Source: Schmidtea polychroa
Lineage: Eukaryota
Assembly: GCA_044892525.1 (NCBI GenBank)
Contig: CM097888.1
Span: 2,666,001-2,730,000 of the forward strand
Direction: 5' to 3'
DNA length: 64,000 nucleotides
Positions 6,201-59,662 of the stretch are shown piece after piece; within the stretch, counting starts at the first letter, position 1; each line of letters begins with the position of its first letter. A program made the position numbers and the translations under genes. The notes beneath the pieces are model-generated. The model saw only the letters and a program-made list of their open reading frames with translations, was not told where the DNA came from and did not search any database.

Positions 6201-9200
6201 ATATTTTTTATTTCCAGATATTTATTGAAAAACAATGCATCTATTTTTGTTTATTCACAAAAAAGTTACCGTATATGCTTGCGTATAAGTCGTAGTAAAA
6301 AAAGTAAAAAAAATTAAGATATTTATTGTTAAAAAATTTGACATCTTCAAAAAGTTCAGATCAATCATCAAAAAGTTCATTGTAGAACTCATCTGAAACA
6401 TCTCCAACATGGTCCTCTGTGTAATCATTACTGTATAATTAAAAAATTAATACTACAAATTATAACCAATTTAATAATTTCGTTAAAAGTTAATTTGTAC
6501 TTTTTTTGACCGTGTATAAGTCGAAGTGGCTATTTTGACTTGAAAATTTGACGTAAATTTCTCGACTTATACTCGAGTATATAAGGTAATTAAAAATTAA
6601 AACATTAAACTACATTAATATTTTATTGAATTGTTGAAAATCAATGTAAAAATCTATAAATCCATGCTTAAATAAATTATTTCAATAATTTTCATATTAA
6701 TGTTTGAAGATCATATTAACTATAGATCATATTATATTAGGTACTCGATATTTCGGCAGAGCCTTTAATGATATATTACAATAATAAACTGATAAATTGT
6801 CAGTGTAGATTCAGATCCATTGTGAATTAGAAATTCGATTTTTGGTCTTCCAGCTTCGGTTATAACATCAAATGACCAGTGTTTCATGTCACTTTGCACT
6901 GATAGTTCATCAAACTTTCTACCAAATAATCTTTTAGCATCAAATACAGTATTATTAGAATTCATTGCAACTTGATTCTGAGCCGCATCGCCGATTAAGC
7001 GTTTTTACATAACTTTAATTTCAGTAGATAAATTCCAAATCCAAGAATATCCAAAAATAAATACTGAATCTCGAATTAAAACTAAAAATGAACCAAATAA
7101 AATCCCTATCATAATCATCCCTTAGTTGTAAATTAAAAATTATCTAAAAGAAATCAGTCAGCTTTAAGTGAACTTTTACTGCTATTTATTTCCATTGCCC
7201 AAAAGATGAATTCAGAATGTATCATAAAAATCTATTTCAGTAATCGTTGAGTAGATAAGTTTCTTTATCTCTTTGCTCCAGTTTCATGCAACTCTGGAAC
7301 AATTAACACATAATTCTCCNNNNNNNNNNNNNNNNNNNNNNNNNNNNNNNNNNNNNNNNNNNNNNNNNNNNNNNNNNNNNNNNNNNNNNNNNNNNNNNNN
7401 NNNNNNNNNNNNNNNNNNNNNNNNNNNNNNNNNNNNNNNNNNNNNNNNNNNNNNNNNNNNNNNNNNNNACGACAATAATTATTATGAAGGTCTATACAGT
7501 TTACTTGACTTCTTCCGACATCCAGATTACAACTGCGTACATTTTTATACCATACGTAACGAAGTAGTAATTTATTAAAAGTTAACCATCCATATAACTC
7601 CCATAGAGATGTATCATAAGTACATTGACATGCATTCTTTCCAAGTATCTTTGTACGAGTATATTTTATCATTATCCAATTAAAAATTGTAACGACTCAA
7701 AAATTGCAAGCATATTAACGAACTTGAACATTAAATGGTTCAAAATTGTCCTAAATGTAACCAATATTATTGTCAAGGATATAACCAACAAAACCCCTCT
7801 GATGAAAGCTACCAGAAGTGGCCGCATTGGTGCAGTTAAAAGACTTCTAGTTGTCGGATGCAATGTCAATGTCAAAGATAAAAATGAAGACACTGCGCTA
7901 CACTACGCAGCTAGACAGGGTTCAGCAGATTTAATTCTAATGCTTTTAAAAGTGAGATTATTGGTTTGCATTTTACTTTCTCTGGCCTGTACTTAACGTA
8001 TTATTCCCTTCATTAACGTGTCTTTCTCACAGATTTCCCTTAATCAATATTTAGCATCAATTGTTGGGACTCTTCACAATATTCCTCTTTAATTAATGTC
8101 TTACAAATGATCTTCAATGAACTTTCAATTAATATTCACTTCTGGTTTACATATTCAAAACTTCTTCCAAATTCTTTCTTTTATTAATCCATTTCTTTTT
8201 ATAAATTCTCATTTTACTTAATCTCTTTTGATTCGTATTTCTCTATCTAAGACTTAGAGCTGATTTCTTTAATAGTTCATTAATTTTGATAACCAGCAAA
8301 TCTCTATGCTGAGATTCTGCAAGATTTTTTCCACTACAAACTGGAAAGAAACCAATGGAGTAACGTTGTTGTATGATTATGATAATATGTATGATAATGA
8401 CCATACATATTGGACTTTTCTTCTAACTAATTAATTTATCATATTCTCTTTTGGCATCTGTTCTTTTATAACTTAATTCTCACTCTACTATTCGCTATTA
8501 TTCCCCCCCCCCCTGTCAAGCCCATTTTTCATTATTTAATTCGAATAATTAATTATTGTTGATTTTCTGTAAATCCAAATTTCAGTACTTTTCCACTTAA
8601 TTACGAACTCTTCCATAATTCTGTTCTCATTCCATTTCTCCCTGCTTTCAATTCTATCTACGACCATCTCTACTACATCTCTCATTCATCTTGTTTATAT
8701 TCATTTTTATTTTAAAATTATTTTAATTTTACAATTTTAACATTTTCAATAAATTGCATTTCCCACGTTATATATTTCCATTCAGTTAAATAAAATACAA
8801 AGAAAATTTAACAGGAATCCACGACAATCCAGTAGACAATTATTTCCCGGGACAGTTAATACCGATTTTTTGAAATATTTATTTATTTATTCATTCTTTA
8901 TTTGTTAATTATTATTAATAATTATTACACATAACTGAAAGGGGTTTATTGTACAATTTGTACATGCACTCATTCAATTTACTGTTAATCATATGAAAGT
9001 CTCCAATAAATATTATTGAGATTAATGCAGGGTCGGAACCTTGTCATTGCAAAGAGCCACATGAAAAAATACCATTGTATAAACCCCATTCAATATGCAT
9101 ACAGTGTAACTTAAATAATATAACAAACAGAAAAATAAATTGCAGTTTTATTACAGTTTGACAAATAATTTACAAGTTAATTAAAATAAAATAAATCAAT

Positions 9201-10587
9201 TTAATTTAATTAAATGTTAATTAGAAAAGTAATCAATTTTCAAAAATATCTATGTTATTTATTAAAACTAAATTTGAATGGGAACATTTTTAAATGAACC
9301 AATTTCGCAAAATATTATCCAAGAGCCACATGGTGAATTTATTTCGGCAAAATACCCAAGAGCCACGTGATAAAGCTCAAAGAGCCGCAGGTTCCCGACC
9401 CCATGGATTAACGTATAAATAATATTTTATTATTAATGGCACAAGTAATAATGTCATACATAATTAAACATTAACTTTCTAGTGTAATAGATGAGCCATT
9501 TCTTAAACTGGGATTAACTGTTTCAGATCAAGTGTATGTAGCAAGTTCCATAATAATTTTATAAATATTTTATTCCATTTGATGAGGGGTATTTCAATAA
9601 ATTTAACCCTTAACGGTTGTAAATCACCTCTGACCTGACAACAATATATACAATATACAAAGATAGCGCCTGATAAGGGTTAAAATCGAAATAATGACTT
9701 CAAATTAATTTTATTTTCAATTTTATTAATATTTAGTGACTTTTAAATATTTCTTTTGTAATATTTAAATATTAAATCTAGTGATAAATGTACATAATTA
9801 CTAATTCAATATTATAACATACAAAGTTGAGTTTTGATAAAGGGATTTCTGAGCCGAAGGCTCGTTGTGGCATTTAATCATCCTCATTGCCATCACCGAT
9901 TTCTAAGGTTGTCATTCCAAATTACGTATGAATTTAAATTTCCAGTACGATGCCAGAATAGATGCTCAAAATCAGTGGGGTCTTACTCCCCTTATGGAGG
10001 CTGTGTCATACAGCCAACAATCAGTCGTTCAAATTCTTATCCGCAGCAAGTGTGATCTGTATAAGCGAGACTATAGAACAGGAGACACTGCATTGCATGT
10101 GGCTGTAAGAAAGAATTATGTTCATCTAGTTGAGATGCTTTTGAAAGCTGGCAAATGGTACATAGAATATAATTTCAATAACTTTGGAGAATCTTTCGTT
10201 CATGACGCTGTCTGGTACAATCGATGTGAACTTGTTCGTCTGTTCCTAATGCATAATTATAATTTTGATTATCCCGCAAAGAAGTTGGCATCGGGGACAG
10301 AAAAATCTCCATTTCAACTTGTTCTTGAACGGGGACATTTGGAACTTGCAAAAGTGTTGTCACGTGTTTGTTGTTATTGGAGTAAAAATTCTAACACCAT
10401 CAAACGAATCGAGTTTCAGGAACTTGAAGAGGTAAAAAGTTTGAGACAATGGTGCAGAAAAATAATCCGAAGGCAATTAGGATTTCATATTTATGAAAAG
10501 CTGCAAAAAATCAATCTGCCCCCCGCACTGATTGAATACATTCAATTGGAAGATATCAAATGGGGCCCGAAAATTTCGGTCAAGTGA
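3284..10587 (+). CDS. Ankyrin repeat and SOCS box protein (ASB family), 5' end not found
   Basis: Exons 3284-3418, 7778-7951 and 9946-10587, all phase 0 with AG/GT sites. The joins restore ankyrin repeats (GANSDSQ|[11 protein letters not shown]; LMLLK|[19 protein letters not shown]). C-terminal SOCS box [17 protein letters not shown]...[11 protein letters not shown]. Confidence 0.92.
5560..6010 (-). mobile_element. LTR retrotransposon gag-like remnant in ASB intron
   Basis: Minus frame [16 protein letters not shown] resembles the start of a Ty3/gypsy gag. Shares the gagaacccgag block with about 1460. Confidence 0.4.
6834..7004 (-). pseudogene. hsp70: HSP70 N-terminal ATPase-domain fragment, intronless, antisense in ASB intron
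   Basis: [57 protein letters not shown] matches cytosolic HSP70. Preceded by an in-frame stop and followed by unrelated sequence. Confidence 0.9.
9028..9405. mobile_element. hAT (Charlie/Buster-type) MITE
   Basis: TIRs cagggtcggaacc / ggttcccgaccccatg. 8-bp TSD gattaatg / gattaacg with central TA. Internal agagccac repeats. Confidence 0.8.
9607..9679. mobile_element. Tiny piggyBac-type MITE candidate
   Basis: TTAA on both sides (9603-9606, 9680-9683). Ends ccctta...taaggg. Confidence 0.45.
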
Positions 10588-11879: not shown

Positions 11880-12486
11880 AAAACAAATACAAATGATTTC
11901 AAAGAAAATAGAAATCATAAAATTTATTAGATGGCTTAAAGAAAGATAAGTTGTCAAAATACTTAATGAAGACCGAATTTTCGCGATGAAAAGATTTTTT
12001 AAAGAAAACACTCTTAATTCAATTGATGCCGGTGCGATAGTCATTAATGCATTGAATATTTTAGTTACTTGTGCATTTCCATGTAGCTTCAAAAATATTC
12101 ATTTCTTCTGTGAAATATGCTGTAGAATCACGCTAGCTCTCCTTTGATTCAAAACAGTTTGGAAGCTTTCGCTTTCTCGCGGGTGTAAGGAAGTAGAATA
12201 TAATAACTACTCTCATTTTAGAGATATTATCATCCAAAGTCTGGCTATCCACTATTTCGATTTTAAAGAGGAACTTGATGTTTTCAGACTTCATCATCCG
12301 ACCATTGCTTTTTCTTATATAGCAAGTCGGGATTACTAAATTGCCATGCCTCAACTCCTCTAGAGTCATTTAGGTTGCTTTTGTTTTGATTCATTATCGC
12401 ACCATCCATATGAAAAAAAATTCAGTTGATATCAAACTTATCTACATGGGTTTCCTATCACATTGGGAGGAGTTGTAATAAAAGTT
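11880..12486 (-). mobile_element. hAT transposase pseudogene, 3' half (split by the foldback element)
   Basis: LMTIAPASIELRVFS..NLFIAKIRSSLS is the hAT dimerisation motif. Upstream DSQTLDDNISKMRVVI fits the hAT core. Confidence 0.65.
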
Positions 12487-15400
12487 AAGGTGAGTAGGTA
12501 GTTAGTGGCCCCCCGCAGCAATGACCCCGGGGGGGGGGTTCTGCTGCAACTTTTGATTACGCAATTTTTCAGACTATAGTGAGGGGGTCTCCTTGGTCCT
12601 GGGATTTTCAATACAAAAATTCGACTACCACTAAAAAGCCAAGGATTATTCACACTATAGTGAGGTGAGTCTCCTTGGTCCTGAGAAATAGGTGGTCTAC
12701 ACTAAAAAAGCCAAGGATTATTCACACTATAGTGAGGTGAGTCTCCTTGGTCCTGAGAAATAGGTGGTCTACACTAAAAAAGCCAAGGATTATTCACACT
12801 ATAGTGAGGGGGTCTCGATGGTCCTGGGATTTTCAATACAAAAATCCGACTACCACTAAAAAAGCATGGTAATTTAAGGTCTCAGGATATTTTCAATACA
12901 AAAATCCGACTATCAATAAAAAAGCATGGATTTTTCGAATTAAATTAAGGTGGGTCTCCTTGGTCCTGAGAATTTCAATACAAAAAGCTGGTCTTCAATT
13001 AAAAAGAGTGACAATTTAAGGTCTCGGGATATTTTCAATACAAAAATCCGACTATCAATAAAAAAGCATGGATTTTTCGAATTAAATTAAGGTGGGTCTC
13101 CTTGGTCCTGAGAATTTCAATACAAAAAGACAGTCTTCAATAAAAAAGCATGGTAATTTAAGGTCTCGGGATATTTTCAATACAAAAAGGCAGTCTACAC
13201 TAAAAAAGAGTGGCAATTTAAGGTCTCAGGATATTTTCAATACAAAAAGACAGTCTTCAATAAAAAAGCATGGATTTTTCGAATTAAATTAAGGTGGGTC
13301 TCCTTGGTCCTGAGAAAAAGGCGGTCTACAGTAAAAAACGTGGTAAATTTTTCAATTAAAGTAAATGATGGTTCAAATTTTCAAATAAGGTAATTATGGT
13401 CCTAAAAAATTAAATTACAGTAAATTATGGTCCAAATTTTTCAATTAAAGTAAATTATGGGTCTAAAAATTGAATTAAAGTAAATTATGGTCCAAATTTT
13501 TCAATTAAAGTAAATTATGGGTCTAAAAATTGAATTAAAGTAAATTATGGTCCAAATTTCTCAAATACAGTAAATTATGGTCCAAATTTTTAAATTAAAG
13601 TAAATTAAGGTTCTAAAATTTAAATTAAAGTAAATAATGGTCCAAATTTTTAAATTAAAGTAAATTTAGGTTCTAAAATATTAAATTACAGTAAATTATG
13701 GTCCAAATTTTTCAATTAAAGTAATGAATGGGCTCAAATAACTAAATTAAGGTTCTAAAAAATTAAATTAAAGTTAATTAAGGTCCAAATTTTAAAATTA
13801 AGTAATCAATGGTCAAAAATTTTAAATAAGTAAATTAAAGTAATAATTTTTAAATAAGTAATATAATAAGTATATTAAAGTAAGATTTTAAAATTTATTA
13901 ACAAAAAGTTGAAATAATAGAAGGTGTTTGAGAATTGAAATTTTTTAATGAAAATTTTTATGAAATAATTTTTTAAGTAATTTTTAATAGAAATTTTTAT
14001 GGAATAATTTTTTAAGTAATTTTTAATGGAAATTTTTATGAAATAATTTTTTAAGTTAATTTTTAATGGAAATTTTTATGAAATATTTTTCAATGATAAT
14101 TTTAGATGAAAATTTAAATGGAAAATTTTTTAAGTTAATTTTTATGAAATATTTTTCAAAGACAAATTTTAATAATAATTCAACAACAAACCAACAACTT
14201 AGTACCAACATGTATTTACAACCAGATACCTACAACTAGTTACTAACAACCAGTTACCTGATACCAACTACTCACAACCCACAACAACCAGCTAACAACT
14301 AGCTACCAAGTACTAACAACCACCATCAACCAGGTACTAAGCCTTAATTACCAACTACTAAGTACCTACAACTAGTTACTAACAACCAGTTACCTGCTAC
14401 CAAGTACCTACAACTAGATACTAACAACCAAAAACATGCAACCAACTAGGTACTAGATACCAAGTACTATCAACCAAAAACAACCAGCTAACAATCACCT
14501 ACCAAGTACTAACAACCAACATCAACCAGGTACTAAGCATTAATTACCAACTACCAAGTACTAACAACCATCAACCAGCTAATAACTAACAACCTGATAC
14601 CAACTACTCACAACCAACATCAACCAGGTACTAAGCATCATCAACCAACTACTAAGTACCTACAACCACCTACCAAGTACTAACAACCAAAAACAAGCAA
14701 CCAACTAGGTACCAGATACCAACTACTAAGTACCTACAACCAGCTAGGTACTAGATACCAAGTACTTACAACCCACAACAACCAGGTACTAAGCATTATC
14801 AACCAAGTACTAACAACCACCTACCAACTACTTACAACCTACAACCAACTAGCTACCACCTACCAACTACTTACAACCAGCTAACAACTAACTACCACCT
14901 ACCAAGTACTAACAACCAACAACAACCAGCTAACAACTAGCTACCACCTACCAAGTACATACAATCACCTACCCATTAACTAGCTACTAAGTACTATCAA
15001 CCAGCTACCACCTACCAAGTACTAACAACCAACAACTAAGCATTATCAACCAAGTACTTACAACTAGTTACTAACAACTAGTTACCTGATACTAAGTACC
15101 TACAACCACCTACCCATTAACTAGCTAGTAGAAACTAACAACTAGCTACCTGATACTAAGTACCTACAACCACCTACCCATTAACTAGCTACAACCAGAT
15201 ACCTACAACAAACTACCAAGTACTAACAACCAACAACTAAGCATTATCAACCAAGTACTAACAACTAGATACCAAGTACTAAGCACTGTCAACTAGATAC
15301 CAAACACTTACAACCAGATGACCACATGAAATTATTGGTTAAATATGAAAATAAGGGTTATATTTAGTTGTTAAGTAAATTATGGTGTAAAATTAAGTAA

Positions 15401-15787
15401 TAAAGAATAATTAGGTAAATTAAGGATAAATTAAGGAAAATTAAGGTTCAAAATTTAAAATTAAGTAACCAATGGTCCAAATTTTAAATTAAAGCTAAAG
15501 GAGTAAATTAAAGTAATAATTTTTAAATAAGTAATGTAATAAGTAAATGTAATAAGTAACCACCAACTTTTTTGAGAAATGTAATTTTTAATGAAAATTT
15601 AAAATGAAATTTTTTTTAAGTTAATTTTAAATGTAAAATTTTTTAAATAAATTTTAATGAAATAATTTTTTAAGTTAATTTTAATGAAATTTTTTTTTAA
15701 GATAATTTTAAATACAAATTTTAATGAAATAATTTTTAAGTTAATTTCAATGAAATATTTTTCAAAGTCAAAGTCAAATTTTAATGA

Positions 15788-15852
<65 letters not shown>
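15788..15852. repeat. (AAT)n microsatellite
   Basis: Pure aat run inside the foldback left arm. Confidence 0.95.
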
Positions 15853-15853
<1 letters not shown>

Positions 15854-16322
15854 TCAACAATCAGTTACCAACAACCAGATACTAAATATTTTTCACTATG
15901 TGCTAAGAAATAAGTTTCAAATACTTACAACATGATACCATGTACTAACTAACTCTCAAACAACTAGATACCTACAAAAACCTACTAAATATTCTTCATT
16001 GTATTTTATGAAATGCATTTTAAATTAATTTTTTATCTGTCTTCAAAAATATGTTTAATTACAATCAATAGAAAACCTTTTCAAATTTAACAAAAATGTT
16101 GATTTTCATCAAAAAACCACAACTTAATCACTTTAAAACACTACGTGAAATTCAAAATAATTTAAATTACAATGAAAGACTAATGAATTCTAATTTACAA
16201 AACATTCTTCTTTTAATTGATAACTTATTATTGCAACGTAAAATCGCATTCAATAAATACTTATTGTTGATCAGTTTTATTATATATACTCTGAGTTTAT
16301 CCGACAGGATGTTTTGACCCCC

Positions 16323-16409
16323 TAAGGGTACTGGTCGTAAGGGTACTGGTCATAAGGGTACTGGTCGTAAGGGTATTAGTCGTAAAGGTACTGGTCGTAA
16401 GGATATTGC
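16323..16409. repeat. 15-bp minisatellite (taagggtactggtcg), about 5.8 copies
   Basis: Direct tandem units visible. Preceded by gagtttatccgaca, which recurs with the same unit at 43551-43620. Confidence 0.9.
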
Positions 16410-19168
16410 TAACTCTCAATCCCTTACCTACCCATTAACTAGCTACTAAGTACTAACAACCAGGTCTCAAACAACTAAATACTAAACACTTACAATCAAC
16501 TAACAATCAGGTACTAAGTATTAACAACCTACAACTATATAACAACAATCAGTAAACAACACTGTACCAACTACCAAATACAAGATACCAACAACTAGAT
16601 ACCAAGTACCAACAAACCACACATAAAAATAATAGCAATTAAATACAAAATATTCTTCATCACATACACTATCTGCTTATCAAAATCTAAAAAGTCAACC
16701 AACTACTTACAACCAACAACTATGTACTAACAAATTGATCTTTAAAAGCAAATACTCTTCACTTGAAAAATTGGATGAAAAATTAATTGAACTCAAGACA
16801 TCAATAACTTGATAAAAATTGATTAAATAATTTTATTTCAATTAATTTATTCAATCTAAATCAATTATTTATTAGATCTTATTTCAAAATTTTTATTAAT
16901 TTATTATCTTAGTGGATTCAACTTGAATGATCAATATTTTTTTATTTACTGGATGATTAATGATTCAAATTCTTTCTTGTCCATTAATTACATTTTTATA
17001 ATAATTATTTGGTATATTTTGAATAATTTAAATTTTTACAATTATTTAATCAATTTTTATCAAGTTATTGATGTCTTGAGTTCAATTAATTTTTCATCCA
17101 ATTTTTCAAGTGAAGAGTATTTGCTTTTAGAGATCAATTTGTTAACTAGTTAATGGATAGGTGGTTGTAGGTACTTAGTATCAGGTAACTAGTTGTTAGT
17201 ACTTAGTAGTTGGTTAATAATGCATAGTACCTGGTTGTTGACGGTTGTAAGTACTTGGTACCTAGTTGGTTGCTTGTTTTTGGTTGTTAGTACTTGGTAG
17301 GTGGTTGTAGGTACTTAGTATCAGGTAACTGGTTGTTAGTAACTAGTTGTAGGTACTTGGTATCTGGTAATTTGTTGTAGGTACTTGGTTGTTTGAGAGT
17401 TATTTAGTACGTGGTATCTAGTTGTAAGTACTTGGTAGCAGGTAACTGGTTGTTAGTAACTAGTTGTAGGTACTTAGTAGTTGGTAATTAAGGCTTAGTA
17501 CCTGGTTGATGGTGGTTGTTAGTACTTGGTAGCTAGTTGTTAGCTGGTTGTTGTGGGTTGTGAGTAGTTGGTATCAGGTAACTGGTTGTTAGTAACTAGT
17601 TGTAGGTATCTGGTTGTAAATACATGTTGGTACTAAGTTGTTGGTTTGTTGTTGAATTATTATTAAAATTTGTCTTTGAAAAATATTTCATAAAAATTAA
17701 CTTAAAAAATTTTCCATTTAAATTTTCATCTAAAATTATCATTGAAAAATATTTCATAAAAATTTCCATTAAAAATTAACTTAAAAAATTATTTCATAAA
17801 AATTTCCATTAAAAATTACTTAAAAAATTATTCCATAAAAATTTCTATTAAAAATTACTTAAAAAATTATTTCATAAAAATTTTCATTAAAAAATTTCAA
17901 TTCTCAAACACCTTCTATTATTTCAACTTTTTGTTAATAAATTTTAAAATCTTACTTTAATTTACTTATTATATTACTTATTTAAAAATTATTACTTTAA
18001 TTTACTTATTTAAAATTTTTGACCATTGATTACTTAATTTTAAAATTTGGACCTTAATTAACTTTAATTTAATTTTTTAGAACCTTAATTTAGTTATTTG
18101 AGCCCATTCATTACTTTAATTTAAAAATTTGAACCATTATTTACTTTAATTGAAAAATTTGGACCATAATTTACTGTAATTTAATTTTTTAGGACCATAA
18201 TTTACTGTAATTTAATATTTTAGAACCTTAATTTACTTTAATTTACTTATTTAAAATTTTTTACCATTGATTACTTAATTTACTTATTTAGACCATAATT
18301 TACTTTAATTTAATTTTTTAGGACCATAATTTACTGTAATTGAAAAATTTGGACCATAATTTACTGTAATTTTAAAATTTGGACCATAATTTATTTTAAT
18401 TGAAAAATTTTGACCATAATTTACTGTATTTGAAAAATTTGGATCATAATTTACTGTAATTTTAAAATTTGGACCATTATTTACTTTAATTCAAAAATCT
18501 TAGCCCATAATTTACTGTAATTCAAATTTTTAGACCCATAATTTACTGTATTTTAATTTTTTAGAACCATTATTTACTTTAATTGAAAAATTTACCACGT
18601 TTTTTAGTGTAGACCACCTTTTTCTATTGAAATTCTCAGGACCAAGGAGATCCACCTGAATTGACCTAGAAAAATCCATGCTTTTTTAGTGGTAATTCAA
18701 ATTTGTATTGAAAATATCCTGAGACCTAAAATTACCATGCTTTTTTATTGAAGACTGTCTTTTTGTATTGAAAATATCCTGAGACCTTAAATTACCATGC
18801 TTTTTTAGTGTAGACCACCTTTTTCTATTGAAAATCCCAGGACCATCGAGACCCCTTCACTATAGTCTGAATAATCCTTGGCTTTTTTAGTGGTAGTCGG
18901 ATTTTTGTATAGAAAAAAATTTTTTGTATTGAAAATCCCAGGACCATCGTTTTTGTATTGAAAAAAATTTTTTTGTATTGAAAATCCCAGGATCATCGAG
19001 ACCCACCTCACTATAGTCTGATAAAAAAAAATTTGGACCAAAAATCCCTGAAAGCAAAAAATGTGAGTTGGAAAAATTGCGTAATTAAAAGTTGGAACAA
19101 TTTTACCCCCCCCCCCCCCGGGGGGGAGGTAATTGTTCCAGTGGGCCACTAACTACCTACTAAGGTGA

Positions 19169-27939: not shown

Positions 27940-30900
27940 TCACAGAATTGCAATGGGATGTTCCCTAGTCGGAGGATTTAGGCTAGGTATTGATGCTGTC
28001 GCTTCCTTAATTACACCAAGTGTACTGTTGAAGGTTTGTTTGATGACAGTGTCTGCAATTTTCTCCGATAGCTGCAAATATTACCCGTCAAATATAACCA
28101 ATTATCACCAACTAATGCAAATTTCATAAACAGTAAACAAACTATAACTGGAAACGCAAATAATAACTATTTAATAACTTCGATAATTTGTTTAAAATAA
28201 GATCTCTATTGCCCAGATAGCACTTTGCTCCTAGAGTGATGTTGAATTCACATCTTTCGGCACAACTTGTTCCCCTGGGTTTGATCTTAATGTGTTCAAT
28301 GTTCAATATTTCTAGCAATACTTCTTTAATTGATGATATAAATAAATATGAAACAGAAGAAATATAAGTGTGAAGGGCTAAGAGTTAAAAATCAACTCGA
28401 GAATCAGGTAATTTATCTAGGCATTTTATCAACAGTTAAAATTATCTATTTATATAATTCCCTTGATATGCATATCAAACTTTACATATTTTCCAATTAA
28501 CTTCCAATTAAGCTACTAATCATTGTAAGTAATGTATTTAGATTAAAATTTTATGAATTCAATATTCCTATGTCAATCAAGAGTACAAAGATGAAATACG
28601 CCCGTTTGTATAGAATAAAAACTTCTTTAATACCGGTTGGTGTGTACGCCAACTTTGTGATTCATCATTTTTGTTATTTTGACATTTTACATTTTAGAAT
28701 CCATTTTCTAAAAATGATTGGTAAGTAGGTAAAAAGTAACTTTTAAGGTTTGAATTTCGATTTTATATAGATATGAGATCAGCGCTATGCTGTAACTTTT
28801 GGGGACCCTATACAGACACTAAGATATCTTTTTTTATTGATTTTAATTAAAAAATACTACAAGAAATTATAAAGCGATTTTTCGAGCTCTTGCTGGTAAA
28901 TTCATCAATTATATCATTGTAATCAATCGCTCTGGCTGTTGCATTTTCATTCGACAGTATTGCTAATCCAAAAAGTCTTTCCTGTGACATTGTAGACCGA
29001 AGATAATTTTCAATTAATTTTAGTTTTGAAAACGATCGTTTTTGAGAATTTTCATTGATGGTATTTTCTTTCAATTCCTGATATTTTCTTGCTATTGGAG
29101 AAATTTTTCTAAAGTATTTAATATTTGGGACGCAGTGCGATATCGATAGTACGGCACTATATGAGATTATTATTCAAGCTCATAAATATTCAATATTTAT
29201 ATTAGAATTTATTTTTAAATACTTTTTTTAGCAATTTTATAAATTTCTGTTTATAATTTTGGATTAATTTCGATTTAATGTAAATTAGATCAATTTTAAA
29301 TTATANNNNNNNNNNNNNNNNNNNNNNNNNNNNNNNNNNNNNNNNNNNNNNNNNNNNNNNNNNNNNNNNNNNNNNNNNNNNNNNNNNNNNNNNNNNNNNN
29401 NNNNNNNNNNNNNNNNNNNNNNNNNNNNNNNNNNNNNNGTTGCATGCGTTTTTTCTATCGCGCCTGTGTGCGCGGTCTGGTTAGACCAATTCTGGTTGGT
29501 GTGCGCACACAGACGCGAGCAATGGAAATTCGATTGAATTTTGTAAGTAGAAATGATTTTGTAGAAATTAGATGGAATTTTTGAGTTTTGTGAATTCTGG
29601 AACTTTTTGTTTTGAAACCGGAGGTTGGAAATAATTGAATGGATCCAGATTGGGACTATTTCGTCAAATCCGCTGATGACTATTATGCTGAAAATTGTGA
29701 TACAATGACATTGCGCATATGGGATACGGCAGATCAAGCAAGATTTGGAACTATAACCTCGTCTTATTACAGAGGAGCTCATGAAATTATTGTTGTGGTT
29801 GATGTTACCGATCAAGATTCGTTTAACAATGTTAAAAATTGGCTTAATGAAATCGATAGATATGCAAAAGGAAAAGTTCCCGATAAAATGATTGAGACGA
29901 GTTCAGCTACGAGATTGTTTAATATTACTGAAAGTACTGGAGGTGTTATGACTGGTATGATCCCTGATTGTCGATCGCAAGTTTATCGTGCACAAATGGA
30001 AGCAGCTCGATTAAAATCTGACATTGGACATGACATTGAAATGGACAAACTGGTATTAGTCAAAACTGATCCACGCGGCCCTGTAGAGGCGGAAAATAAA
30101 ATTGTTCTTGGACTTATTCAATTATTATTATTATTATTATTTTATTATATTGAGACAATTTTTTTTGCAGTAGTAAATTGCGAATTTTTTCCTGGGAAGC
30201 ATACAAATGTGATTCAACAAAATTCAATAAAGTATTTGTTTGCCACCATCTTTTTGAATATTATATTATTTTTTTACTGAATTTTTGGAGATTCCCAATA
30301 ACATTCCAAAATTATAGCCAACATTTATGGAACTGTCGAAGGTTCTAGTTCAGTTACTTCAGAAATGTTTGAAATATTATAACAATATTAAATCAATTGC
30401 AATTAAAAGAACAAATCATACGTTATGTAAAAAGGCAAAGTTTAAATATTTTTCAAAATCATAAAAAATAAAATAATTTCAAATTTTAAAAATTCATTTA
30501 AATTTTTTAAAAATTCAATAAATATTTTATTATGTAAAATTAAATTAATTAAAATTTATTTTTGTTAAATAAACATTTTTAAAGAATTTTAATTTTTTAT
30601 GTTAATAAAACTTAATGAAATGGAAAAAAAATTTGTAAATATTTAAAATCAAATTTTAAAAATTCGTTTAAATATTTTCAAAAGAAACAAAAATTTAAAA
30701 AAATATTTTAAAAATTAAAACCAAACATAAAAAAATTTTTAATTTAAAAAAATAATTTTATAATCTTATTTAAAAAAATTAAAACAAAGCATAAAATATA
30801 TTTTCAAATAAAATAATTTCGCTATAATATTTATAAAATTAAAACAAAATAGATAAAATAATTAATTAAATATTTTAAAAATAAAAAAACCTCAAAACAT

Positions 30901-33900
30901 TTTCAAAAAATTAAAAAAATTTGCCAAAAAAATTGTAAAATTAAAACAAAATAGATAAAAATTATTTTGCAATGTTATAAAAAGTAAAATATTTTTAAAT
31001 TTAAAATTTGAAAAATTCATCTAAAGATTTTTTAATTTTAAAAATCGAAATAATATTTAGAAAATTAAAACAAAACACAAAATATATTTCCGAATTTTAA
31101 AGGTTTGCCAAAATAATTATAAAATTAAAACAAAACGGATATTAAAAAGTATTAAAAATATTTCCATCCATAAAGAGATATATTTGCTTTTTGATAAATC
31201 TTACGAAAATATCTCTTCATTTTCTCGACAACTCAAAGTATAGTTCAAAAAATTTTCCTTGGATATTTTCCCGAATTAATTTCCCTTTACTCGTCCAGTA
31301 TCAATATTGTATAATATGTAAATTATTAAATTAATTAACTTGAATATTATTTATTGAAATATTGATTTATAGTTTGAAATGAAAATATTGGAAATTGATA
31401 ATATAATATATAATTAATAAATCCATTATATTTGCCCGAATGGTTGGAATTTAATATAAATATCATATAGTAATGTCAATATAAATTACCTCATATTGAC
31501 CCGGGCCGGGAGTTTCCTCGATGGCGTCATTGAATCGCTTTTCTCGGAAATAGAATTTCCCAGTTTTCGTATTTAAGTAGGTTTTGTGGTCATAACTTGC
31601 TGGTCCTGCATCGAAACGTGAGATAATTAATAGGCAGTCTTGCCAACTCTACCTGGCAAACTTGGATCCACACAATCCAAAGGAGAACCTTTTGCATATC
31701 GACTGGCATTAGAAAGGAAACTGCAATGTCTTCTTTTAGCATCTTTAGTTCTTGGTTCCGTGTAATGTTTCTTGCCTTGAGACTTCTTGAATGCGCTTAT
31801 TACATCATATTGCGTTGCGTCAGGCAAATCCTATGTGCAAGCAAATTTTTTATTTTTCCCTGGAGTACATTTCAATCAGTCTTACGAATTTCCCTTGAAT
31901 AACAGGATCATAATCGCGATTGGTCAGAGAAGCAAACATGGATGACATAGGTTGATAGAGTTTAGATGCGTTAGCTAATTGTTTGGGTTGATAATGAGAG
32001 GGTCCAGGAATATCATTTGCGTTTCTATTTCCCAGATCTACGTCTCTTATACTAGTTGAACCAAAACCACCTTTTTTTGTCATTGATATATAGCTGGGCT
32101 TCTCTCTTGTTGCTTCTGAGACGTTGTAAACTTGTGGGCCTAAGGTTTATGAAAATAAAATAGACAGTTGCGGTTTATTAGAAACACTCAAATTATTATA
32201 TATTGATAAGCCAGTGAGATTTCCATGAAATTGTGCTATGAAACATTTTTTCTTTATCGTTAATACTATGTAAATAATCCACATGGAAAATTTTAAATTT
32301 TAATTTTAATCGATTAAATGACATTTTTTAATGAAATTAACCAATTAAATTATCAGATATTAATCATTGAAATTATCAATGAAATTATGAATTTAAATAT
32401 CAATTCAAATATCAGTTAAAATATCAATTAAAATATCAATTAAAATATCCATTAAAATATCAATGAAATTATCAATGAATTAATCGATGAAACTAATCAA
32501 TGAAATCAATGAAATTGTCAGTGCAATTATCAATGAAATTGTCACTTAAAATATCAAGTAAAATATCAATTAAAATATAGTTAAAATATCAATTAAAATA
32601 TCAATGAAATTATCAATGAATTAATCGATGAAATTAATCAATGAAATTATGTGCAATTATCAATGAAATTGTCACTTAAAATATCAAGTAAAATATCAAT
32701 AAAAATATCAATAAAAATATCAATAAAAATATAATTCAAATATCAATTCAAATATCAATTAAAATGTCAATGAAATTATCAATGAATTAATCGATGAAAT
32801 TAATCAATGAAATTATCAGTGCAATTATTAATGAAATTGTCACTTAAAATATCAATAAAAATATCAATTCAAATATCAATTCAAATATCAATTAAAATAT
32901 CAATTAAAATATCAATGAAATCAATGAATTAATGAAATTATTATCAATTAATTTATTGATCCACTATCATGTGAAATGAAATCAAGATAAAGGATAGAAT
33001 TAAATCGACGGCATGTAGCTGATAATATCCAGTTGAACATGATCATTAAACAAGCAAATCATAGGAAATACCTGGAATATCAATGTCCACCTTCTCTGTA
33101 AATCGAGTTGCAGTCAGTCCAAACGGACTGCGCTTCATTCCAGTTACTTTTTTCAGTGAATTAAGAGCCGTTCGGGGATCATTATAACTTCCTGGGCCGG
33201 GAATATCATCAAACTGGCTGCGGAATCTCTTAAATAGATATAGAAACTAGCATAGGGTAACCAATCAATCACTTGGGCTTGAACCCCGAATGGGGGGTGT
33301 TCAATCTTTTCACCTTCTTCATTGAAAATCGGCTTTGGACATTCGATGAGTCCCGAATGCATGTAGGATGCTGGTCCGGGAATGTGCTACAATATGACAC
33401 TTTCAAAATGGAGTTTTGTTATCTACCGCAAAATTACATCTTTTATAGCTTTTCTTTGTAGGTCATCGATAAATCTTGGAATGCGCAATTGGGCAAATTT
33501 TCCGCTTTCCCGGCTCTGGTAGTACTCTGTCATATCTGTCCAGCGATCTGAGAACGGATCATATTGCCCCGGCCCTGGGCCCTTTGAGCCACTGAAATCA
33601 GTCCGCCGAGCTCTCTATACTCGAGTTATTAATCATGGCCCATGATAAAACAGTTTCTACATCATAACTCCAGAAGCATCCTTTGTATTTATCTGTTATT
33701 GCGTTTTCTCCAATTTTCGGAATGTAAAACGCTGGACCAAGACTAATATCTCGCTGTGGAGGGCCTTGTTTAATTAACTTCCCATGTGGTCCTTCTTCAT
33801 ATCCAAACGCAGTTTGTGCATTTGGAATGCTAGGTGGCATCTCTTCTCTTTTGTAAATGATTTTGTTTTTATCCAGAATTTTCTTTTTCAATACGTACAT

Positions 33901-42573: not shown

Positions 42574-45500
42574 ATGTCATACAACAATAATTTTAGTTAT
42601 TTTAATGGTTGGATTTTCTTTGATTTTAGTTATGTTTATATATAATTTTAAAAGCTCCAACATCCAATAATGATTGGTGGGGTTCTAAGGATACAAAGAA
42701 ACCAAGCACTTTTGATGAAAGTCGAGTGGTCAAAATTGGTGACTATTTTGAAATACTTAACTTGTTGAAATTGTTTATTCTTATTTAGATTACAACAATC
42801 AACCATATGCTCAAAATTATTTGCAAAACTATGCAAGTATGATTTTACCCAGTGAAAACCGGACCACCGAACCAGTTCATCCTCGACACGAAGTACTTCA
42901 AGGCACAGTAACCCAATTATTTGCTTCCTTTGGATACATCAATGACAACATTATTTTTTCCAAAACGTAATTATATTATTCCTAAAATACATTACTGCTG
43001 ATATTTATAATTTAACCACCAGTTCATATATTCTTTGATTTCTTTATTTTACTGCAAGTTTATGAAAACTGTATTTAGTGCGCTATGAAAAGATATTGCT
43101 ATTAATGAAATAAGATAAAATTGCAGTTTGAAATATTTGAATTAAAGCTGAAATGGCCAAAATTTAATGTTTTTTATTATTTTGAAAAACAATTTCTGGC
43201 AAAAACTATTAAAACACAATTCTGTGATTGTTTACGTTTAAAAACTTGTTAAAATTAAAATATAAACCTATGAAATCGAACAATTGAGAGCTATTTATAA
43301 GATAAAATGGCTTTGATGGAAAACAATAATTAGTTTACAAAAATTATAATTATAAAATAAGTCAATAAATCTATTATATAAATTTTTATTGATTTACAAT
43401 ACAATGGATATTTTGAATTTTTGAATTATATATTTTATAGGTTTTGTATTATGCGGATCTTAATATTTTATCAGATTCGTTACTAAGATTAAAATAATGT
43501 TTTGTGATTCGAAACTATGGGTAAACTGAACTATACCCCCCATATAGTAAGAGTTTATCCGACAAGATATTCTGTCCGCCCTATTGGTGCGGCTCACAAG
43601 GGTAATGGTCGCAAGGGTACCGCTTTGTTGTGGTTGTTGATGATTTGTGGTTCCGAAATTGTTTTGCCCGTGGATCCCAGGTGCAAAATTACAAATGAAT
43701 AATGGAAAAATGTCAAATTTAACTTTGATGTCTCAAATGGTAAATGGTAACGTAAAAATAAAATATAAATAAAACTTTTAAAAGTAGTTATTTAAAATTA
43801 TAACTTTTGTTTCAAAATACAAAAAAATAAATGAAGTTGATTGGATGTGATAAGTGGATTTATGTCCGGCTCAATGTTTGTGATGAGGATCAAACGGCAC
43901 GCTCTACCAAAGAGGAAGACGGGAAAGCAATCAACAGCTTATGTACAATAACTCATAATGCTGGATATAAAATAGGTAAAGTACTATTTCCTGGTGACGG
44001 AGTAAAGCCATATTTCTTATATTCAACACTGTATTGTCTGCATCTATTTTTCAGCTCCCTCATACTGTTATNNNNNNNNNNNNNNNNNNNNNNNNNNNNN
44101 NNNNNNNNNNNNNNNNNNNNNNNNNNNNNNNNNNNNNNNNNNNNNNNNNNNNNNNNNNNNNNNNNNNNNNNNNNNNNNNNNNNNNNNNNNNNNNNNNNNN
44201 NNNNNNNNNNNNTTTTTTGCTGTTGACAAAAAAATCATGTTAATTCATATCGGTAGTGATTCCCCGTATTTCGATGCATATATAATGTTTTCTATAGTTT
44301 TAATGTTTATATTAATGTAAATATGTAAATTAGTCGTTGAATAAAGACTTATTATATTTGCTATTTTCTAATATCTTGAACCTAACCTCATAATTACATA
44401 TAAAATCGGGTTCACAGTTCGCATTATTTCGGTTTGCGGGTTGTTTAGTGGAACGTATTTTTTAAATTTTATATTAAACCTTGCGTTGTTCAGGGACCCC
44501 AAAATCAAATTTAATTTCCCACGGGCCGCCCGAATGATCCCGGGATCCGTAAGGACCATTTTGGGAACCACTGGTTAAGCTATGCTATAATATAAATCTG
44601 CAATGGTCATGGCATAGATTATTGAATGGTGGTGTAAATATTAACAGTTTGGAATTATTAACATTCTAAGGAGTCTATGATGCTTTTGTCTTCCGAGTCA
44701 AGTAAATATAAAATTATCAAATTACTATCAAATCAAAATAACATTAATAAAAATAAATAATTTATTGAATTATTCCCTTTGCCATCTGTATACTTTTTCA
44801 ACTCAATTTCCCACGTAGAATTAATTCCCTGAGGTATTTTATAGACCTTGTAAAATCAATAAAACCCTTCAATTCTAGCTAGATGAGAGATTTTCTAAAA
44901 ATATAATTAAGATTCTAAAGGGTAAAATAATCTCCATTTTGGCAAGATTATGCGGAAATATTTCATAAATGGTTTTCGATAATCGATTTTCATTGGTTTA
45001 TATTGATAAATTGAGTGCTAATTTTGTCCAACAACTTCAATCTATTCATTATTAAATAAAATATTTTAATTTCCTTATTTATTGTTATAAATCAACCAGC
45101 AAATATCATTAAGCGCTTTATCAACAGAATCATCATGATCATTATCATAGTTATATTGTCTAGGGATGTGTCCGGTCCAATGGTGAAGGTTGGTGATAGA
45201 GTAGCAGTCGATGCAACATACCAACCTAACAATCCTACCAAATACAAAGGGGAAAGAGTTTGTAAAATCGACGATTCAAGATTTAGTTCAACGACAAACA
45301 GCTTATCTAAAATGAAACCGCTTTCTAGAGATTTATCCTCAAGAATTGATATTCCTTTGACATATCGCTCAGATTCTGGGAAATCCGACAAGAAATCCGA
45401 ATCGAAACCCGAATCGAAACCTGAATCGAAACCTGATAAAATTGCTAACAAGAAAATTAAATCTCGGAGGTAATTTAAAATAATTAATTCATTTTGACCA

Positions 45501-46754
45501 ATAAAATAAAAGTTAGAACATTCAATCCTTAATAATAAATTGCTGCTATATTAATATAAATCATTGTGATTGTGCCTGTCGGAAACGACAAATTGATGTA
45601 TTTATTGAACAAATCCTCAGTTATAAACATTTATCATCTAGATCTAGTGAACCAAAAGGAAGAAAGAAATTTGAACCGAAAAAGCAAGGAAAAATAAATT
45701 CTGGTGCCGGAGTGCATTCACCAATCGATCTCACAAATTCAGAAAAATCCGGATCTGTGAAAGGTCCATCGCCAGTATCATTGAAGCGTAAAACAAGAAG
45801 TTCATCAAAAAATCACAAAACTAGCAGCACCAAGACGACAGCTCCCGAAACCTCCGAAAAGACAATAGCAAAAATTAGCGTGGAAAAGTTACCAAAACCA
45901 ATGGAAAGCTTTTCATTGCGTGAATTGGACTGTGCAGCCTTGAAGTTTAGGTGCAAGAATCTCAATCCGCCAAATCAATTCTTTCACGTCTCATTGAAAT
46001 ATCAACAGGCGTTTCCACTTAATCATCCAATGAAATTAGGAAATGCTTGTCACTTTAAAGTAGGCTAAATGTGGTGGTTAATATATCTATCTCAAATGTC
46101 CTCTCTTTGAACGTTGCTAGGTGTTGGATAGAAAGGTGAAGAGTATTGATAATTTCATCAACGAGCAGCTAAATCGTGACATCGACCCGGAAGATGCCGA
46201 TACGACATTTTCAGCAAAAGTTATGCTGCTGTCCACAGCCGAATTGTCAGAATTCTACAAACAAACATTGATCCTAGCAGAAGAGTTTGACAGCAACAAT
46301 AAAATTCCCATTACCAAGGCAATCAAGTTCCTCGTGGGTAACACTGGTCCCAACAAGGAGTTTGCATTTGGTGGTGCGTGGTCTCCGTCACTAGATGGCG
46401 TTGATCCAGATACGAATCCTCGGGTTTTGATCAACACTGCCATCCGCACCTGCAAGAATTTGACTGGGATCGATTTATCTGGATGCTCGTCATGGTGAGT
46501 TGGATTCTTGGATATGCTCAGTGTGCTGCTGTGTTGTTAATCGATATTATTATTATTTATTATTATTATTATTATTATTATTGTTATTGTTGATATGATT
46601 AATTACACCCGAATAGCACCCCAGCGCACTCATGGAATATCGATTATCCATCGCCTTGTTGATCCGACTGACCAAATTCAGCAAAATCATTATGATATAA
46701 ATCAAGCGGACCTCCTGATATCTATCTGTATTTGTAGATATTCAGTTCCAATAC

Positions 46755-46792
<38 letters not shown>

Positions 46793-58462: not shown

Positions 58463-59662
58463 TAGAGTTGGGTATTTCCCGAGAAAATCACATTCTTGAG
58501 ATTCGGGATTTCCCGAAACAAATTCTATAGAATTCTCGAGAAGTCGAGAAAATTTAAAAAACCTGTGAAAAATTCTAAAATCAATGTAAAATAAAGAAAT
58601 TCGAAAAATATGTTTTTTATTTAAGTAAGAAGTACTAAACAATTAATTAAAGTCGTAAAAAGTCGTAAACAAAATAGAAGTAGTAAAACAAAAATAGTTC
58701 AAATCATTATTATTAAAATAGAATAGAATATTAAAACAAAAATAATTCAAAAATATTATTTACTAAAATAAAATTTCAGAAAACACAGACTGTCAATGGC
58801 TGCGTCTGACAATCGCGTACGCTTTTGCGAAACAAAATTCCCCGTCATCTTTATCGCTTCGACTGCCTTCCTCATCCGAATCCTCACCGCAATCTACATC
58901 GTTTTCATTATTATTTTCACCATCGGTGGTTCCATCGCTTACATCACTTTCATATATCCTGTTTGTACGTTTTCGTTTCTGATACATTACCTCCATAATT
59001 GCCAAGTGTATGCCGTGATTGTAGCATAACTGTTGATGCAATGGTGATAGTTTCCCGAATTTGATCATCACATTGACACCGTCACTTGTAATAGAGACGA
59101 TGTCCGACTGGAACCGATGCTATTGCTTATGAACTCACTTTTTGTTATAGCGTTGATTGAAATTCCATCTTTTGCCGCCAATTTTGCTATGATTTGTTCA
59201 AGCGATACAGAAGACGTAATTGTAGAACGTCATATTCGTTTTCCGAACTCATGATATTAAATGCTGAAAATTTAATATTTATGTATTTGAATTTGTTTTA
59301 AATAGAATTAAATTTAACTTACCGATACAAACAGACTAAACAACACAACCGCTTACCACAAAATAAAAATTGAAATGAAATTATAGCTAATGATGTTACA
59401 TTTCATACAATGTGTCATTTTTCCAAGCAAGGAAAGACGTATACTTATTTATTTCAAAAAAGTTATCTTTCAAGTTTTAAAAAAATTGTTTTTTAATGAA
59501 TATTTGATTAAAAAAATTAAAAAAAAACCCCGATTTCTCGAGAAATTCTCGAGATCCGGGATTTCCCAAAATGTTAAAAATTTAAATTCTCGAGATTCGG
59601 AATGGAAAATCTCGAAATTTTCTCGAGAATTCCCGACGTGAAATTCTCGAAACCCAACTCTA
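58463..59662 (-). mobile_element. Internally deleted hAT with both ends, 1200 bp
   Basis: 11-bp TIRs tagagttgggt / acccaactcta. Perfect 8-bp TSD tacatgac (58455-58462, 59663-59670). Subterminal ttctcgaga/tcccga repeats. Internal SITSDGVNVMIKFGK...QLCYNHGIHLAI (catalytic D and CxxH). Confidence 0.93.

What the first reader, a model, noticed from the sequence alone, without database searches (positions are those of the whole stretch)
12493..19161. 6.7-kb modular foldback element made almost entirely of mirrored tandem arrays
Seen: the left arm runs terminal block, then GC-richer 55-75-bp units (a 72-bp period at 12639/12711/12783; about 12560-13340), then 30-bp units aattaaagtaaattatggtccaaatttttc (about 13340-13870), then an AT block (about 13870-14180), then G-poor accaactactaagtacc-type units (about 14180-15330). 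A second partial round of the last three modules follows. After a centre at about 16860-17000 the same modules appear in reverse complement to 19161. There is a 19-bp perfect TIR, a flanking duplication and no transposase. Known: Drosophila FB, Galileo and sea-urchin TU elements have long modular TIRs and drive rearrangements. Inference: this is a large non-autonomous foldback family that may be undescribed in this lineage.
Basis: partly seen in the sequence, partly recalled or inferred. Interest (0 to 1): 0.8.

Follow-up and report, generated by a model that had tools for sequence, protein, structure and literature searches.

The report
Non-coding foldback transposon of mirrored arrays
This is a real 6.7-kb mobile-DNA insertion in an AT-rich animal (probably flatworm) genome: it has no genes, folds back on itself, is two-thirds tandem repeats, and belongs to the known "foldback transposon" type, with ends that could also fit a virus-like Maverick element.

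Summary
Window 12494-19160 is an inverted-repeat element. It has a perfect 18-bp terminal inverted repeat found nowhere else in the window and a perfect 8-bp flanking duplication (TAAGGTGA). The same bases can also be read as a 19-bp repeat plus a 6-bp duplication. Four tandem-array modules run in mirrored order around a 124-bp loop (16875-16998). Arrays cover 67% of the element, and no ORF has a family match.

The arms are not equal: the left is 4.4 kb and the right 2.2 kb. Arm identity is about 86%, except for a 708-bp tract with 2 mismatches, which suggests inter-arm conversion. Units of the innermost array resemble the terminal 15 nt but point the opposite way.

Best reading: a non-autonomous foldback-type DNA transposon, inserted as one unit by an enzyme supplied in trans. 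The superfamily is unresolved. It is either a cut-and-paste type (8-bp duplication) or a derivative with Maverick/Polinton-type ends (6-bp duplication, 5'-AGTAG...CTACT-3').

I could retrieve no other copy, so "family" and "undescribed" remain untested. It is a new member of a known kind, of moderate interest.

The parts
12486..12493 (.). Left copy of the target-site duplication, TAAGGTGA (8-bp reading). In the 6-bp reading it is 12487-12492, AAGGTG.
   Evidence: Read directly. Chance of an 8-bp flank match is 5e-5.
12494..12511 (+). Left terminal inverted repeat, 18 bp and perfect. It is 19 bp if position 12493 is included.
   Evidence: 2 matches in the window against 0.01 expected.
12512..12570 (+). 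Left flanking domain. It holds a C-run/G-run hairpin (stem 12515-12520 / 12542-12547), followed by a box conserved between the two ends (12548-12570).
   Evidence: Identity to the right end falls to about two-thirds immediately inside the perfect TIR.
12571..13344 (+). Module A: the GC-richer arrays, with periods of 72, 60 and 142 bp.
   Evidence: GC 0.36.
13345..13870 (+). Module B: 30-bp array.
   Evidence: 12.7 copies or more. (GC 0.18).
13871..14180 (+). Spacer plus module C: 39/79-bp AT array from 13942 (GC 0.10).
14181..15330 (+). Module D: G-poor array with periods of 7/14/21/42 bp. Its units resemble the terminal 15 nt of the TIR but lie on the opposite strand.
15331..15853 (+). Segment found only in the left arm: a partial second B/C-like round (about 76-80% identical to B'/C'), followed by (AAT)22 at 15788-15853.
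15854..16727 (+). Segment found only in the left arm: mostly unique AT-rich sequence with D-like patches and a 15-bp x 5.3 array at 16323-16402.
   Evidence: No Pfam match for its ORFs.
16728..16874 (+). Innermost part of the left arm (P).
   Evidence: pair I21 (108 nt, 98%)..
16875..16998 (.). Central loop and centre of symmetry, 124 bp.
16999..17144 (-). Innermost part of the right arm (P').
17145..17620 (-). Module D', G-rich on the + strand. It is 476 bp, against 1150 bp or more on the left.
17621..17900 (-). Spacer plus module C'.
17901..18600 (-). Module B': 30-bp array, 20.4 copies.
18601..19025 (-). Module A', shorter and differently arranged than A.
19026..19142 (-). Right flanking domain. 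It holds about 50 bp specific to the right end, the conserved box, and a C7/G14 hairpin with stem 19139-19131 / 19102-19094.
   Evidence: -21.6 kcal/mol, z -3.3.
19143..19160 (-). Right terminal inverted repeat.
19161..19168 (.). Right copy of the target-site duplication, TAAGGTGA.
13714..14421 (.). Left side of a 708-bp tract with only 2 mismatches to 18121-17414 (longest perfect run 534 bp). The neighbouring sequence is about 86% identical.

Best explanation
This is a genuine non-autonomous class II (DNA) transposable element with foldback architecture, and it was inserted here as one unit.

**Shown**
- The terminal repeats are perfect and flanked by a perfect target-site duplication, in otherwise single-copy flanks.
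- Nearly the whole element is one imperfect palindrome around a 124-bp loop.
- The arms are stacks of four tandem-array modules in mirrored order.
- The element has no coding capacity.

**Inferred**
- An enzyme encoded elsewhere in the genome recognises the 18-19-bp ends. It joins them to a staggered cut in the target, and repair of that cut produces the duplication.
- The arrays carry extra binding sites for that enzyme. This applies especially to the D units, which resemble the terminus. Such sites have been proposed for Galileo and other foldback elements.
- The palindrome arose by inverted duplication of a half-element. Since then the arms have drifted through unit gain and loss and a left-arm insertion or duplication, and were partly re-homogenised by inter-arm conversion.
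- The arms had already diverged when this copy inserted. The TIR and TSD are perfect, yet identity drops sharply immediately inside them.

**Favoured enzyme type**
A DDE cut-and-paste transposase that makes an 8-bp duplication. The foldback/Mutator-like range of 8-10 bp fits best. The general claim (a mobile foldback-type non-autonomous element) I hold at about 0.85. The 0.55 given here is for the cut-and-paste, 8-bp version.
For: - **TIR.** Unique in the window and perfect.
- **TSD.** An 8-bp perfect duplication (P = 5e-5).
- **Flanks.** Unique within the window.
- **Arms.** 1639-bit inverted alignment and mirrored module order. All 25 longest inverted repeats listed for the window belong to this element, as do 26 of its 30 strongest tandem arrays.
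- **Strand-specific motifs.** For example, TGGTCC occurs 15 times on + in the left arm and 10 times on - in the right arm, and never on the other strand of either arm.
- **D units resemble the TIR.** There are 21 internal matches to the terminal 15-mer, against 0.65 expected for the window. None of 1000 permuted 15-mers reached 21.
- **No coding capacity**.
- **Published foldback anatomy.** The scheme fits, and TSDs of 8-9 bp (Tetris) and 8-10 bp (Tm1) are on record.
- **Precedent in Galileo.** Unequal array copy number between the two arms of one copy, and arrays proposed as secondary binding sites.
Against: - Only one copy was seen, so mobility rests on the TIR and TSD alone.
- No transposase was found in the window.
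- The 8-bp reading is not forced. The same bases also read as a 6-bp TSD with a 19-bp TIR.
- I obtained no reference terminal motif for hAT, P or Mutator elements from a tool or paper, so the ends could not be matched to any cut-and-paste superfamily.
- The D units point the opposite way to the TIR of their own arm, which a simple model of auxiliary binding sites does not predict.
Confidence: 0.55

Rival explanations
1. The element is a non-coding derivative that uses Maverick/Polinton-type ends. Read as 12493-19161, it begins 5'-AGTAGG and ends CCTACT-3' and is flanked by a 6-bp duplication (AAGGTG). It would then be inserted by a Maverick-type integrase supplied in trans. Its short terminal reiteration could serve protein-primed replication. 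The giant palindrome could be the trace of a copy-back event during strand-displacement synthesis.
For: - Mavericks are described as having long TIRs and 6-bp TSDs.
- Vertebrate Mavericks have the end motifs 5'-(AGT)2//(ACT)2-3' or (AG)3//(CT)3. The repetition is thought to allow 'jumping back' in protein-primed replication.
- This element matches the (AGT)2/(ACT)2 motif at 5 of 6 positions at each end, with a perfect 6-bp TSD.
- Its terminus is reiterated: GTAG, GTAG, TTAG.
Against: - No Maverick gene or gene remnant is present.
- No Maverick is present in the window.
- The motif comes from vertebrates, whereas this host is probably a flatworm.
- The sixth base of the motif differs at both ends, so the trinucleotide reiteration is imperfect.
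- Under this reading the extra matching bases at 12486 and 19168 are coincidences.
- I found no description of a Maverick derivative with foldback arms made of arrays.
Confidence: 0.3
2. The element is two copies of a shorter one-armed element lying head to head, or one copy nested in the other. It is not a single foldback unit. Each arm would run from its TIR to the TIR-like D array.
For: Each arm carries a true TIR at its outer end and TIR-like units in inverse orientation at its inner end.
Against: - The centre is a clean palindrome. P and P' are 98% identical over 108 nt around a 124-bp loop, with no terminal sequence and no inner duplication.
- The only perfect duplication flanks the outer ends.
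Confidence: 0.05
3. It is a local, non-mobile inverted duplication of a satellite-rich stretch. The terminal repeat is simply the edge of the palindrome, and the flanking match is chance.
For: - There is only one copy.
- The arms are divergent and unequal.
- The window holds other minisatellites.
Against: - The identity profile is wrong for this model. It is 18/18 at the very tips, then about two-thirds over the next 30 nt.
- An 8-bp perfect flank match has P = 5e-5.
Confidence: 0.06
4. It is an assembly fold-back artefact: a chimeric long read or mis-join that created the second arm.
For: - Palindromes are a known artefact class.
- The 708-bp near-identical tract could come from read mis-assignment during polishing.
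Against: - The arms differ in length by 2.2 kb, in unit numbers and in sequence (about 86% identity).
- The right end has its own flanking domain and joins unique flank sequence that repeats the 8-bp target.
- An artefactual arm would be near-identical and would not recreate a TSD.
Confidence: 0.04

Closest known systems
Foldback-type transposons as a structural class (Drosophila FB, Tetris, Tm1 of root-knot nematodes, sea-urchin TU elements)
   Same: - Very long inverted arms built from tandem repeats.
- A short unique flanking domain at each tip.
- A non-coding middle.
- Arms of one copy that differ in repeat number and are only about 90% identical. Tm1 averages 93%.
- TSDs of 8-10 bp in Tetris and Tm1.
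   Different: - Sequence relatedness to these families could not be tested.
- There are four different array modules per arm, whereas Tetris has a single 220-bp repeat.
- The innermost array consists of terminus-like units in inverse orientation.
- A 9-bp reading of the duplication fails here.
- The features of FB proper and of the TU elements come from my own knowledge.
Galileo (P superfamily, Drosophila)
   Same: - Foldback-like long TIRs with internal tandem repeats.
- The longest TIRs occur in non-autonomous copies.
- Repeat numbers differ between the two TIRs of one copy.
- The repeats are proposed as secondary transposase-binding sites.
   Different: - Galileo copies are bounded by 7-bp duplications. 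Here a symmetric boundary gives 6 or 8 bp.
- No THAP-type transposase or binding site could be tested.
Maverick/Polinton virus-like elements
   Same: - Long TIRs.
- A 6-bp TSD under one reading of the boundary.
- Ends that match the vertebrate 5'-(AGT)2//(ACT)2-3' motif at 5 of 6 positions each.
   Different: - Mavericks are 12-25 kb and carry eight or so conserved genes, with TIRs of 46-1447 bp.
- This element is 6.7 kb with no gene.
- Its inverted repeat makes up nearly the whole element.

Membership tests
Foldback-type elements (structural class) | Long inverted arms make up most of the element | tested here: met
   Arms are 12494-16874 and 16999-19160 around a 124-bp loop.
Foldback-type elements (structural class) | Arms are built of tandem repeats behind a unique flanking domain, and copy number can differ between arms | tested here: met
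   TRF arrays cover 67% of the element. Module D is 1150 bp on the left and 476 bp on the right, and A/A' also differ. Published scheme.
Foldback-type elements (structural class) | Non-coding or short middle domain in non-autonomous copies | tested here: met
   No ORF exceeds 114 aa and there is no Pfam match.
Foldback-type elements (structural class) | Target-site duplication flanks the whole unit | tested here: met
   8-bp TAAGGTGA or 6-bp AAGGTG.
Foldback-type elements (structural class) | Dispersed multi-copy family with an autonomous partner | not testable with these tools
   The host genome is not available. There is no second copy in the window. Searches of the available collections came back empty.
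Tetris / Tm1-like (Mutator-Foldback) | TSD of 8-10 bp, most often 9 | tested here: inconclusive
   An 8-bp reading is perfect and a 9-bp reading fails.
Tetris / Tm1-like (Mutator-Foldback) | Phantom/MULE transposase in autonomous copies with the same ends | not testable with these tools
   No autonomous copy is accessible.
Galileo / P superfamily | 7-bp duplication | tested here: not met
   With symmetric ends the duplication is 6 or 8 bp, not 7. Galileo's 7 bp is.
hAT | 8-bp TSD and short TIRs with the family's terminal motif | tested here: inconclusive
   The 8-bp TSD is met under one reading.
Maverick/Polinton | 6-bp TSD | tested here: inconclusive
   A perfect AAGGTG duplication appears if the element is read as 12493-19161. 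The same bases also give 8 bp.
Maverick/Polinton | Reiterated end motif 5'-(AGT)2//(ACT)2-3' or (AG)3//(CT)3 | tested here: inconclusive
   The ends are 5'-AGTAGG ... CCTACT-3', which is 5 of 6 at each end. The motif is documented for vertebrates only.
Maverick/Polinton | Genes for protein-primed polymerase B, integrase, capsid proteins, protease and ATPase | tested here: not met
   None of the seven element ORFs scanned, up to 114 aa, had a Pfam match. The element can therefore be at most a non-coding derivative, not a Maverick.
Ginger2/TDD | TGTNR termini and an RTATAY 6-bp target | tested here: not met
   The termini and target differ.

The most novel reading that the evidence does not exclude
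The element is a gene-less parasite, or a copy-back derivative, of a Maverick/Polinton virus-like element. It keeps only the Maverick-type reiterated ends (5'-AGTAG...CTACT-3', 6-bp duplication). The rest is a giant array-filled palindrome, an architecture so far associated with cut-and-paste foldback elements. Foldback architecture would then have arisen on a self-synthesising, integrase-based element, in a flatworm-like host.
Probability: 0.3. Interest if true: 0.65.

Novelty: new member of a known kind. Interest (0 to 1): 0.4.

Why it matters
Foldback elements are small in number but large in effect. Their long inverted arms promote ectopic recombination, inversions and deletions, and their internal repeats can seed satellite DNA.

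A clean, well-bounded example in an AT-rich, probably flatworm, genome would add a lineage in which I found none described. It also gives ready search handles (termini, subterminal box, four array units) for annotating that genome.

Three details deserve a specialist's look:
- terminus-like units stacked in inverse orientation deep inside each arm;
- a subterminal hairpin that differs between the two ends by two compensated base pairs;
- ends that can be read as Maverick-type.

If the last point holds, it would link foldback architecture to virus-like self-synthesising elements.

Tried and rejected
**Other copies in the window.** BLASTN of the element against the rest of the window returned only (AAT)n microsatellite matches.

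**Relatives through spurious ORFs.**
- Exact look-up of nine ORFs, five from the element, one from its left flank and three from elsewhere in the window: none is in the collection.
- Word-indexed search with the 114-aa terminal ORF: nothing.
- Exhaustive search with the 66-aa A-module ORF: two weak hits. The first, P0014, was followed up. It is an ORF over an unrelated 20-bp tandem array in an ENA contig, with no DNA similarity, so I rejected it as a low-complexity chance match. The second, P0015, is a repetitive charged protein, which I judged a low-complexity match from its sequence alone.

**DNA scans.**
- The 18-bp TIR was absent from metagenome, viral and prokaryote genome contigs.
- A 24-nt subterminal box was absent from metagenome and viral contigs. 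It was written with one IUPAC letter, R, covering G at the left end and A at the right. It is a search pattern matching both ends as they stand, not a consensus of the element.

**Other searches.**
- Rfam: no match anywhere in the window.
- A transposase in the window: none. ORF pieces at 58756-59181 (-) looked hAT-like by eye, but Pfam gave nothing even at E = 10.
- Host identification: only partial. The ASB exon hits a Logan contig at 93% aa identity and Macrostomum lignano at 73%. The Logan contig is 52% GC and only 78% identical in DNA. The run and assembly accessions are not mentioned in the paper library.
- The Kapitonov & Jurka 2006 and Krupovic & Koonin 2015 papers are not held.
- The left subterminal hairpin is not more stable than shuffles (z = -0.08). 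Only the right one is.

Full report
**Context.** The window is AT-rich, about 28% GC, and is animal DNA.
- ORFs at 7625-7996 and 9928-10587 encode ankyrin repeats plus a SOCS box.
- ORFs at 45135-47689 carry S1-like and DBC1 domains.
- The ORF at 29639-30280 carries Ras and proteasome domains.
- The closest named relative of the ankyrin-SOCS exon is a Macrostomum lignano protein at 73%. An unnamed Logan contig is 93% identical in protein, but it is 52% GC and only 78% identical in DNA.
- I therefore call the host 'probably a flatworm' and go no further.
- Seven N stretches lie outside the finding and were left alone.

- The 18-mer GTAGGTAGTTAGTGGCCC occurs at 12494-12511 (+) and 19143-19160 (-) and nowhere else, even with 3 mismatches.
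- Immediately outside these repeats lie two copies of TAAGGTGA, at 12486-12493 and 19161-19168. The flanks are otherwise unique in the window. The chance of such an 8-bp match is about 5e-5.
- Inside, the self-comparison shows modules A (12571-13344; periods 72/60/142 bp), B (13345-13870; 30 bp), C (13942-14180; 39/79 bp) and D (14181-15330; G-poor, 7/14/21/42 bp). They are mirrored as D' (17145-17620), C' (about 17650-17900), B' (17901-18600) and A' (18601-19025).
- The best arm alignment is 89% over 1361 columns, 1639 bits.
- The 25 longest inverted repeats listed for the whole window all belong to this element, as do 26 of its 30 strongest tandem arrays.
- Short motifs are strictly strand-specific by arm.
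- Arrays cover 67% of the 6667 bp.

- The true centre is a 124-bp loop (16875-16998) between innermost arm segments 16728-16874 and 16999-17144, which are 98% identical over 108 nt.
- The left arm is therefore 4.38 kb and the right arm 2.16 kb.
- The excess on the left has two sources. One is a longer D array. The other is a left-only block at 15331-16727. That block holds a B/C-like partial round (76-80% identical to B'/C'), (AAT)22, about 0.9 kb of mostly unique sequence with a 15-bp x 5 array, and D-like patches.

**Further anatomy.**
1. *Identity is very uneven along the arms.*
   - The TIR matches at 18/18.
   - Identity is about two-thirds over the next 30 nt.
   - It is about 86% in A and B.
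   - The tract 13714-14421 against 18121-17414 has only 2 mismatches in 708 bp.
   - It is about 70-80% in D.
   - It is 98% next to the loop.
   - The 708-bp tract has sharp edges. It is best explained by recent conversion between the arms. A polishing artefact cannot be excluded.
2. *The TIR and TSD are perfect, but identity falls immediately inside them.* This argues that the terminal 18 bp were under constraint in the element's lineage, and that the arms had already diverged when this copy inserted.
3. *D units resemble the terminal 15 nt of the TIR.* There are 21 internal matches with 3 or fewer mismatches, against 0.65 expected. None of 1000 permutations of the 15-mer reached 21; the mean was 0.37 and the maximum 17. 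They always lie on the strand opposite to the TIR of their own arm.
4. *Each end has a C-run/G-run hairpin just inside the TIR.* The stems differ between the ends at two base pairs, both compensated. The right hairpin is clearly stable (-21.6 kcal/mol, z -3.3). The left is no better than shuffles. I treat this as a lead only.
5. *There is no coding capacity.* The longest ORF is 114 aa, and nothing in Pfam matches even at E = 1.

**What it is.** The anatomy matches the published scheme of foldback elements: flanking domain, tandem-repeat outer domain, inner domain and non-coding middle.
- Known examples show the same behaviour seen here. Arms of one copy differ in repeat number. Arm identity is around 93% in Tm1. 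Non-autonomous copies have the longest arms. The repeats are proposed as secondary transposase-binding sites.
- I conclude, at about 0.85, that this is a real non-autonomous foldback-type DNA element, inserted as one unit by an enzyme supplied in trans.
- The clean central palindrome, with no inner termini, argues for origin by inverted duplication of a half-element rather than by two independent insertions.
- An assembly artefact is unlikely. The arms differ by 2.2 kb and about 14% in sequence, and the right end recreates the target duplication in unique flank.

**Which enzyme?** This is unresolved, because the boundary is ambiguous. Position 12493 is A and 19161 is T.
- *Reading (a):* an 18-bp TIR with an 8-bp duplication. 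This fits the 8-10-bp range of Tetris and Tm1, both assigned to the Mutator/Foldback group. It is also the length I associate, from my own knowledge, with hAT and P elements.
- *Reading (b):* a 19-bp TIR with a 6-bp duplication (AAGGTG) and ends 5'-AGTAGG ... CCTACT-3'. Mavericks/Polintons are described as having long TIRs, 6-bp duplications and, in vertebrates, reiterated end motifs 5'-(AGT)2//(ACT)2-3' or (AG)3//(CT)3, thought to serve jumping-back in protein-primed replication. The element matches the first motif at 5 of 6 positions at each end.
- Each reading needs a small coincidence in the flanking bases, so the bases themselves do not decide.
- I favour (a) at 0.55 against (b) at 0.30. 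Foldback architecture with binding-site-like arrays is documented for cut-and-paste elements. No Maverick gene or remnant is present. The Maverick motif is documented only for vertebrates.
- A 7-bp duplication (Galileo) and a 9-bp one do not fit. Ginger2 features do not fit either.

**Relatives.** None could be retrieved.
- The window holds no second copy.
- The element's ORFs are not in the protein collections.
- Of the two weak hits from the exhaustive search, the one traced is an unrelated 20-bp array; the other is a repetitive charged protein judged a low-complexity match.
- The TIR is absent from metagenome, viral and prokaryote contigs, and the subterminal box from metagenome and viral contigs.
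- Full-text searches found no foldback element described in planarians or flatworms.
- Repbase and Dfam were not available.
- 'Family' and 'undescribed' therefore remain untested.

**Verdict.** This is a new member of a known kind. Interest is moderate (0.4), and would be higher if the Maverick-type reading proves right.

Noticed in passing
window 52215-53227: A very regular minisatellite: 31-bp unit x 32.7 copies, 95% matches. It is strongly G/T-skewed and lies just downstream of the DBC1-domain gene. It is unrelated in sequence to the element and has no flanking inverted repeat.
   Followed up: partly
window 32363-32920: A 12-bp x 46.8 tandem array (80% matches) with no inverted repeats around it.
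   Followed up: partly
window 29639-30280 (+): One 213-aa ORF carries a partial Ras-family match (aa 21-81) followed directly by a partial proteasome-subunit match (aa 77-138). It lies next to a masked N stretch (29306-29438). It could be a chimeric or pseudogene-like arrangement, or two adjacent exons read through.
   Followed up: no
window 7625-7996 and 9928-10587 (+); locus L001: Ankyrin-repeat plus SOCS-box gene, whose stop codon lies 1.9 kb upstream of the element. Its closest relative, a Logan contig, is 93% identical in protein but 52% GC and only 78% identical in DNA. This points to a large shift in base composition between related species.
   Followed up: partly
window 61406-62206 (+): A 266-aa ATG-started ORF, the longest clean ORF in the window. 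It has no Pfam match and no homologue in the 5.8-billion-protein collection.
   Followed up: yes
window 58756-59181 (-): Short adjacent ORF pieces that looked by eye like the C-terminal part of a hAT-type transposase. Pfam gave no match even at E = 10, so the resemblance is unsupported.
   Followed up: yes
window 45135-47689 (+): Exons of a gene with S1-like and DBC1 domains, of the CCAR2/DBC1 type.
   Followed up: no
window 12525-12538 and 19106-19126: C-run/G-run palindromes (C4G10 on the left, C7G14 on the right) sit just inside each terminus. Homopolymer lengths like these are error-prone in assemblies, so the exact run lengths need read-level confirmation.
   Followed up: partly
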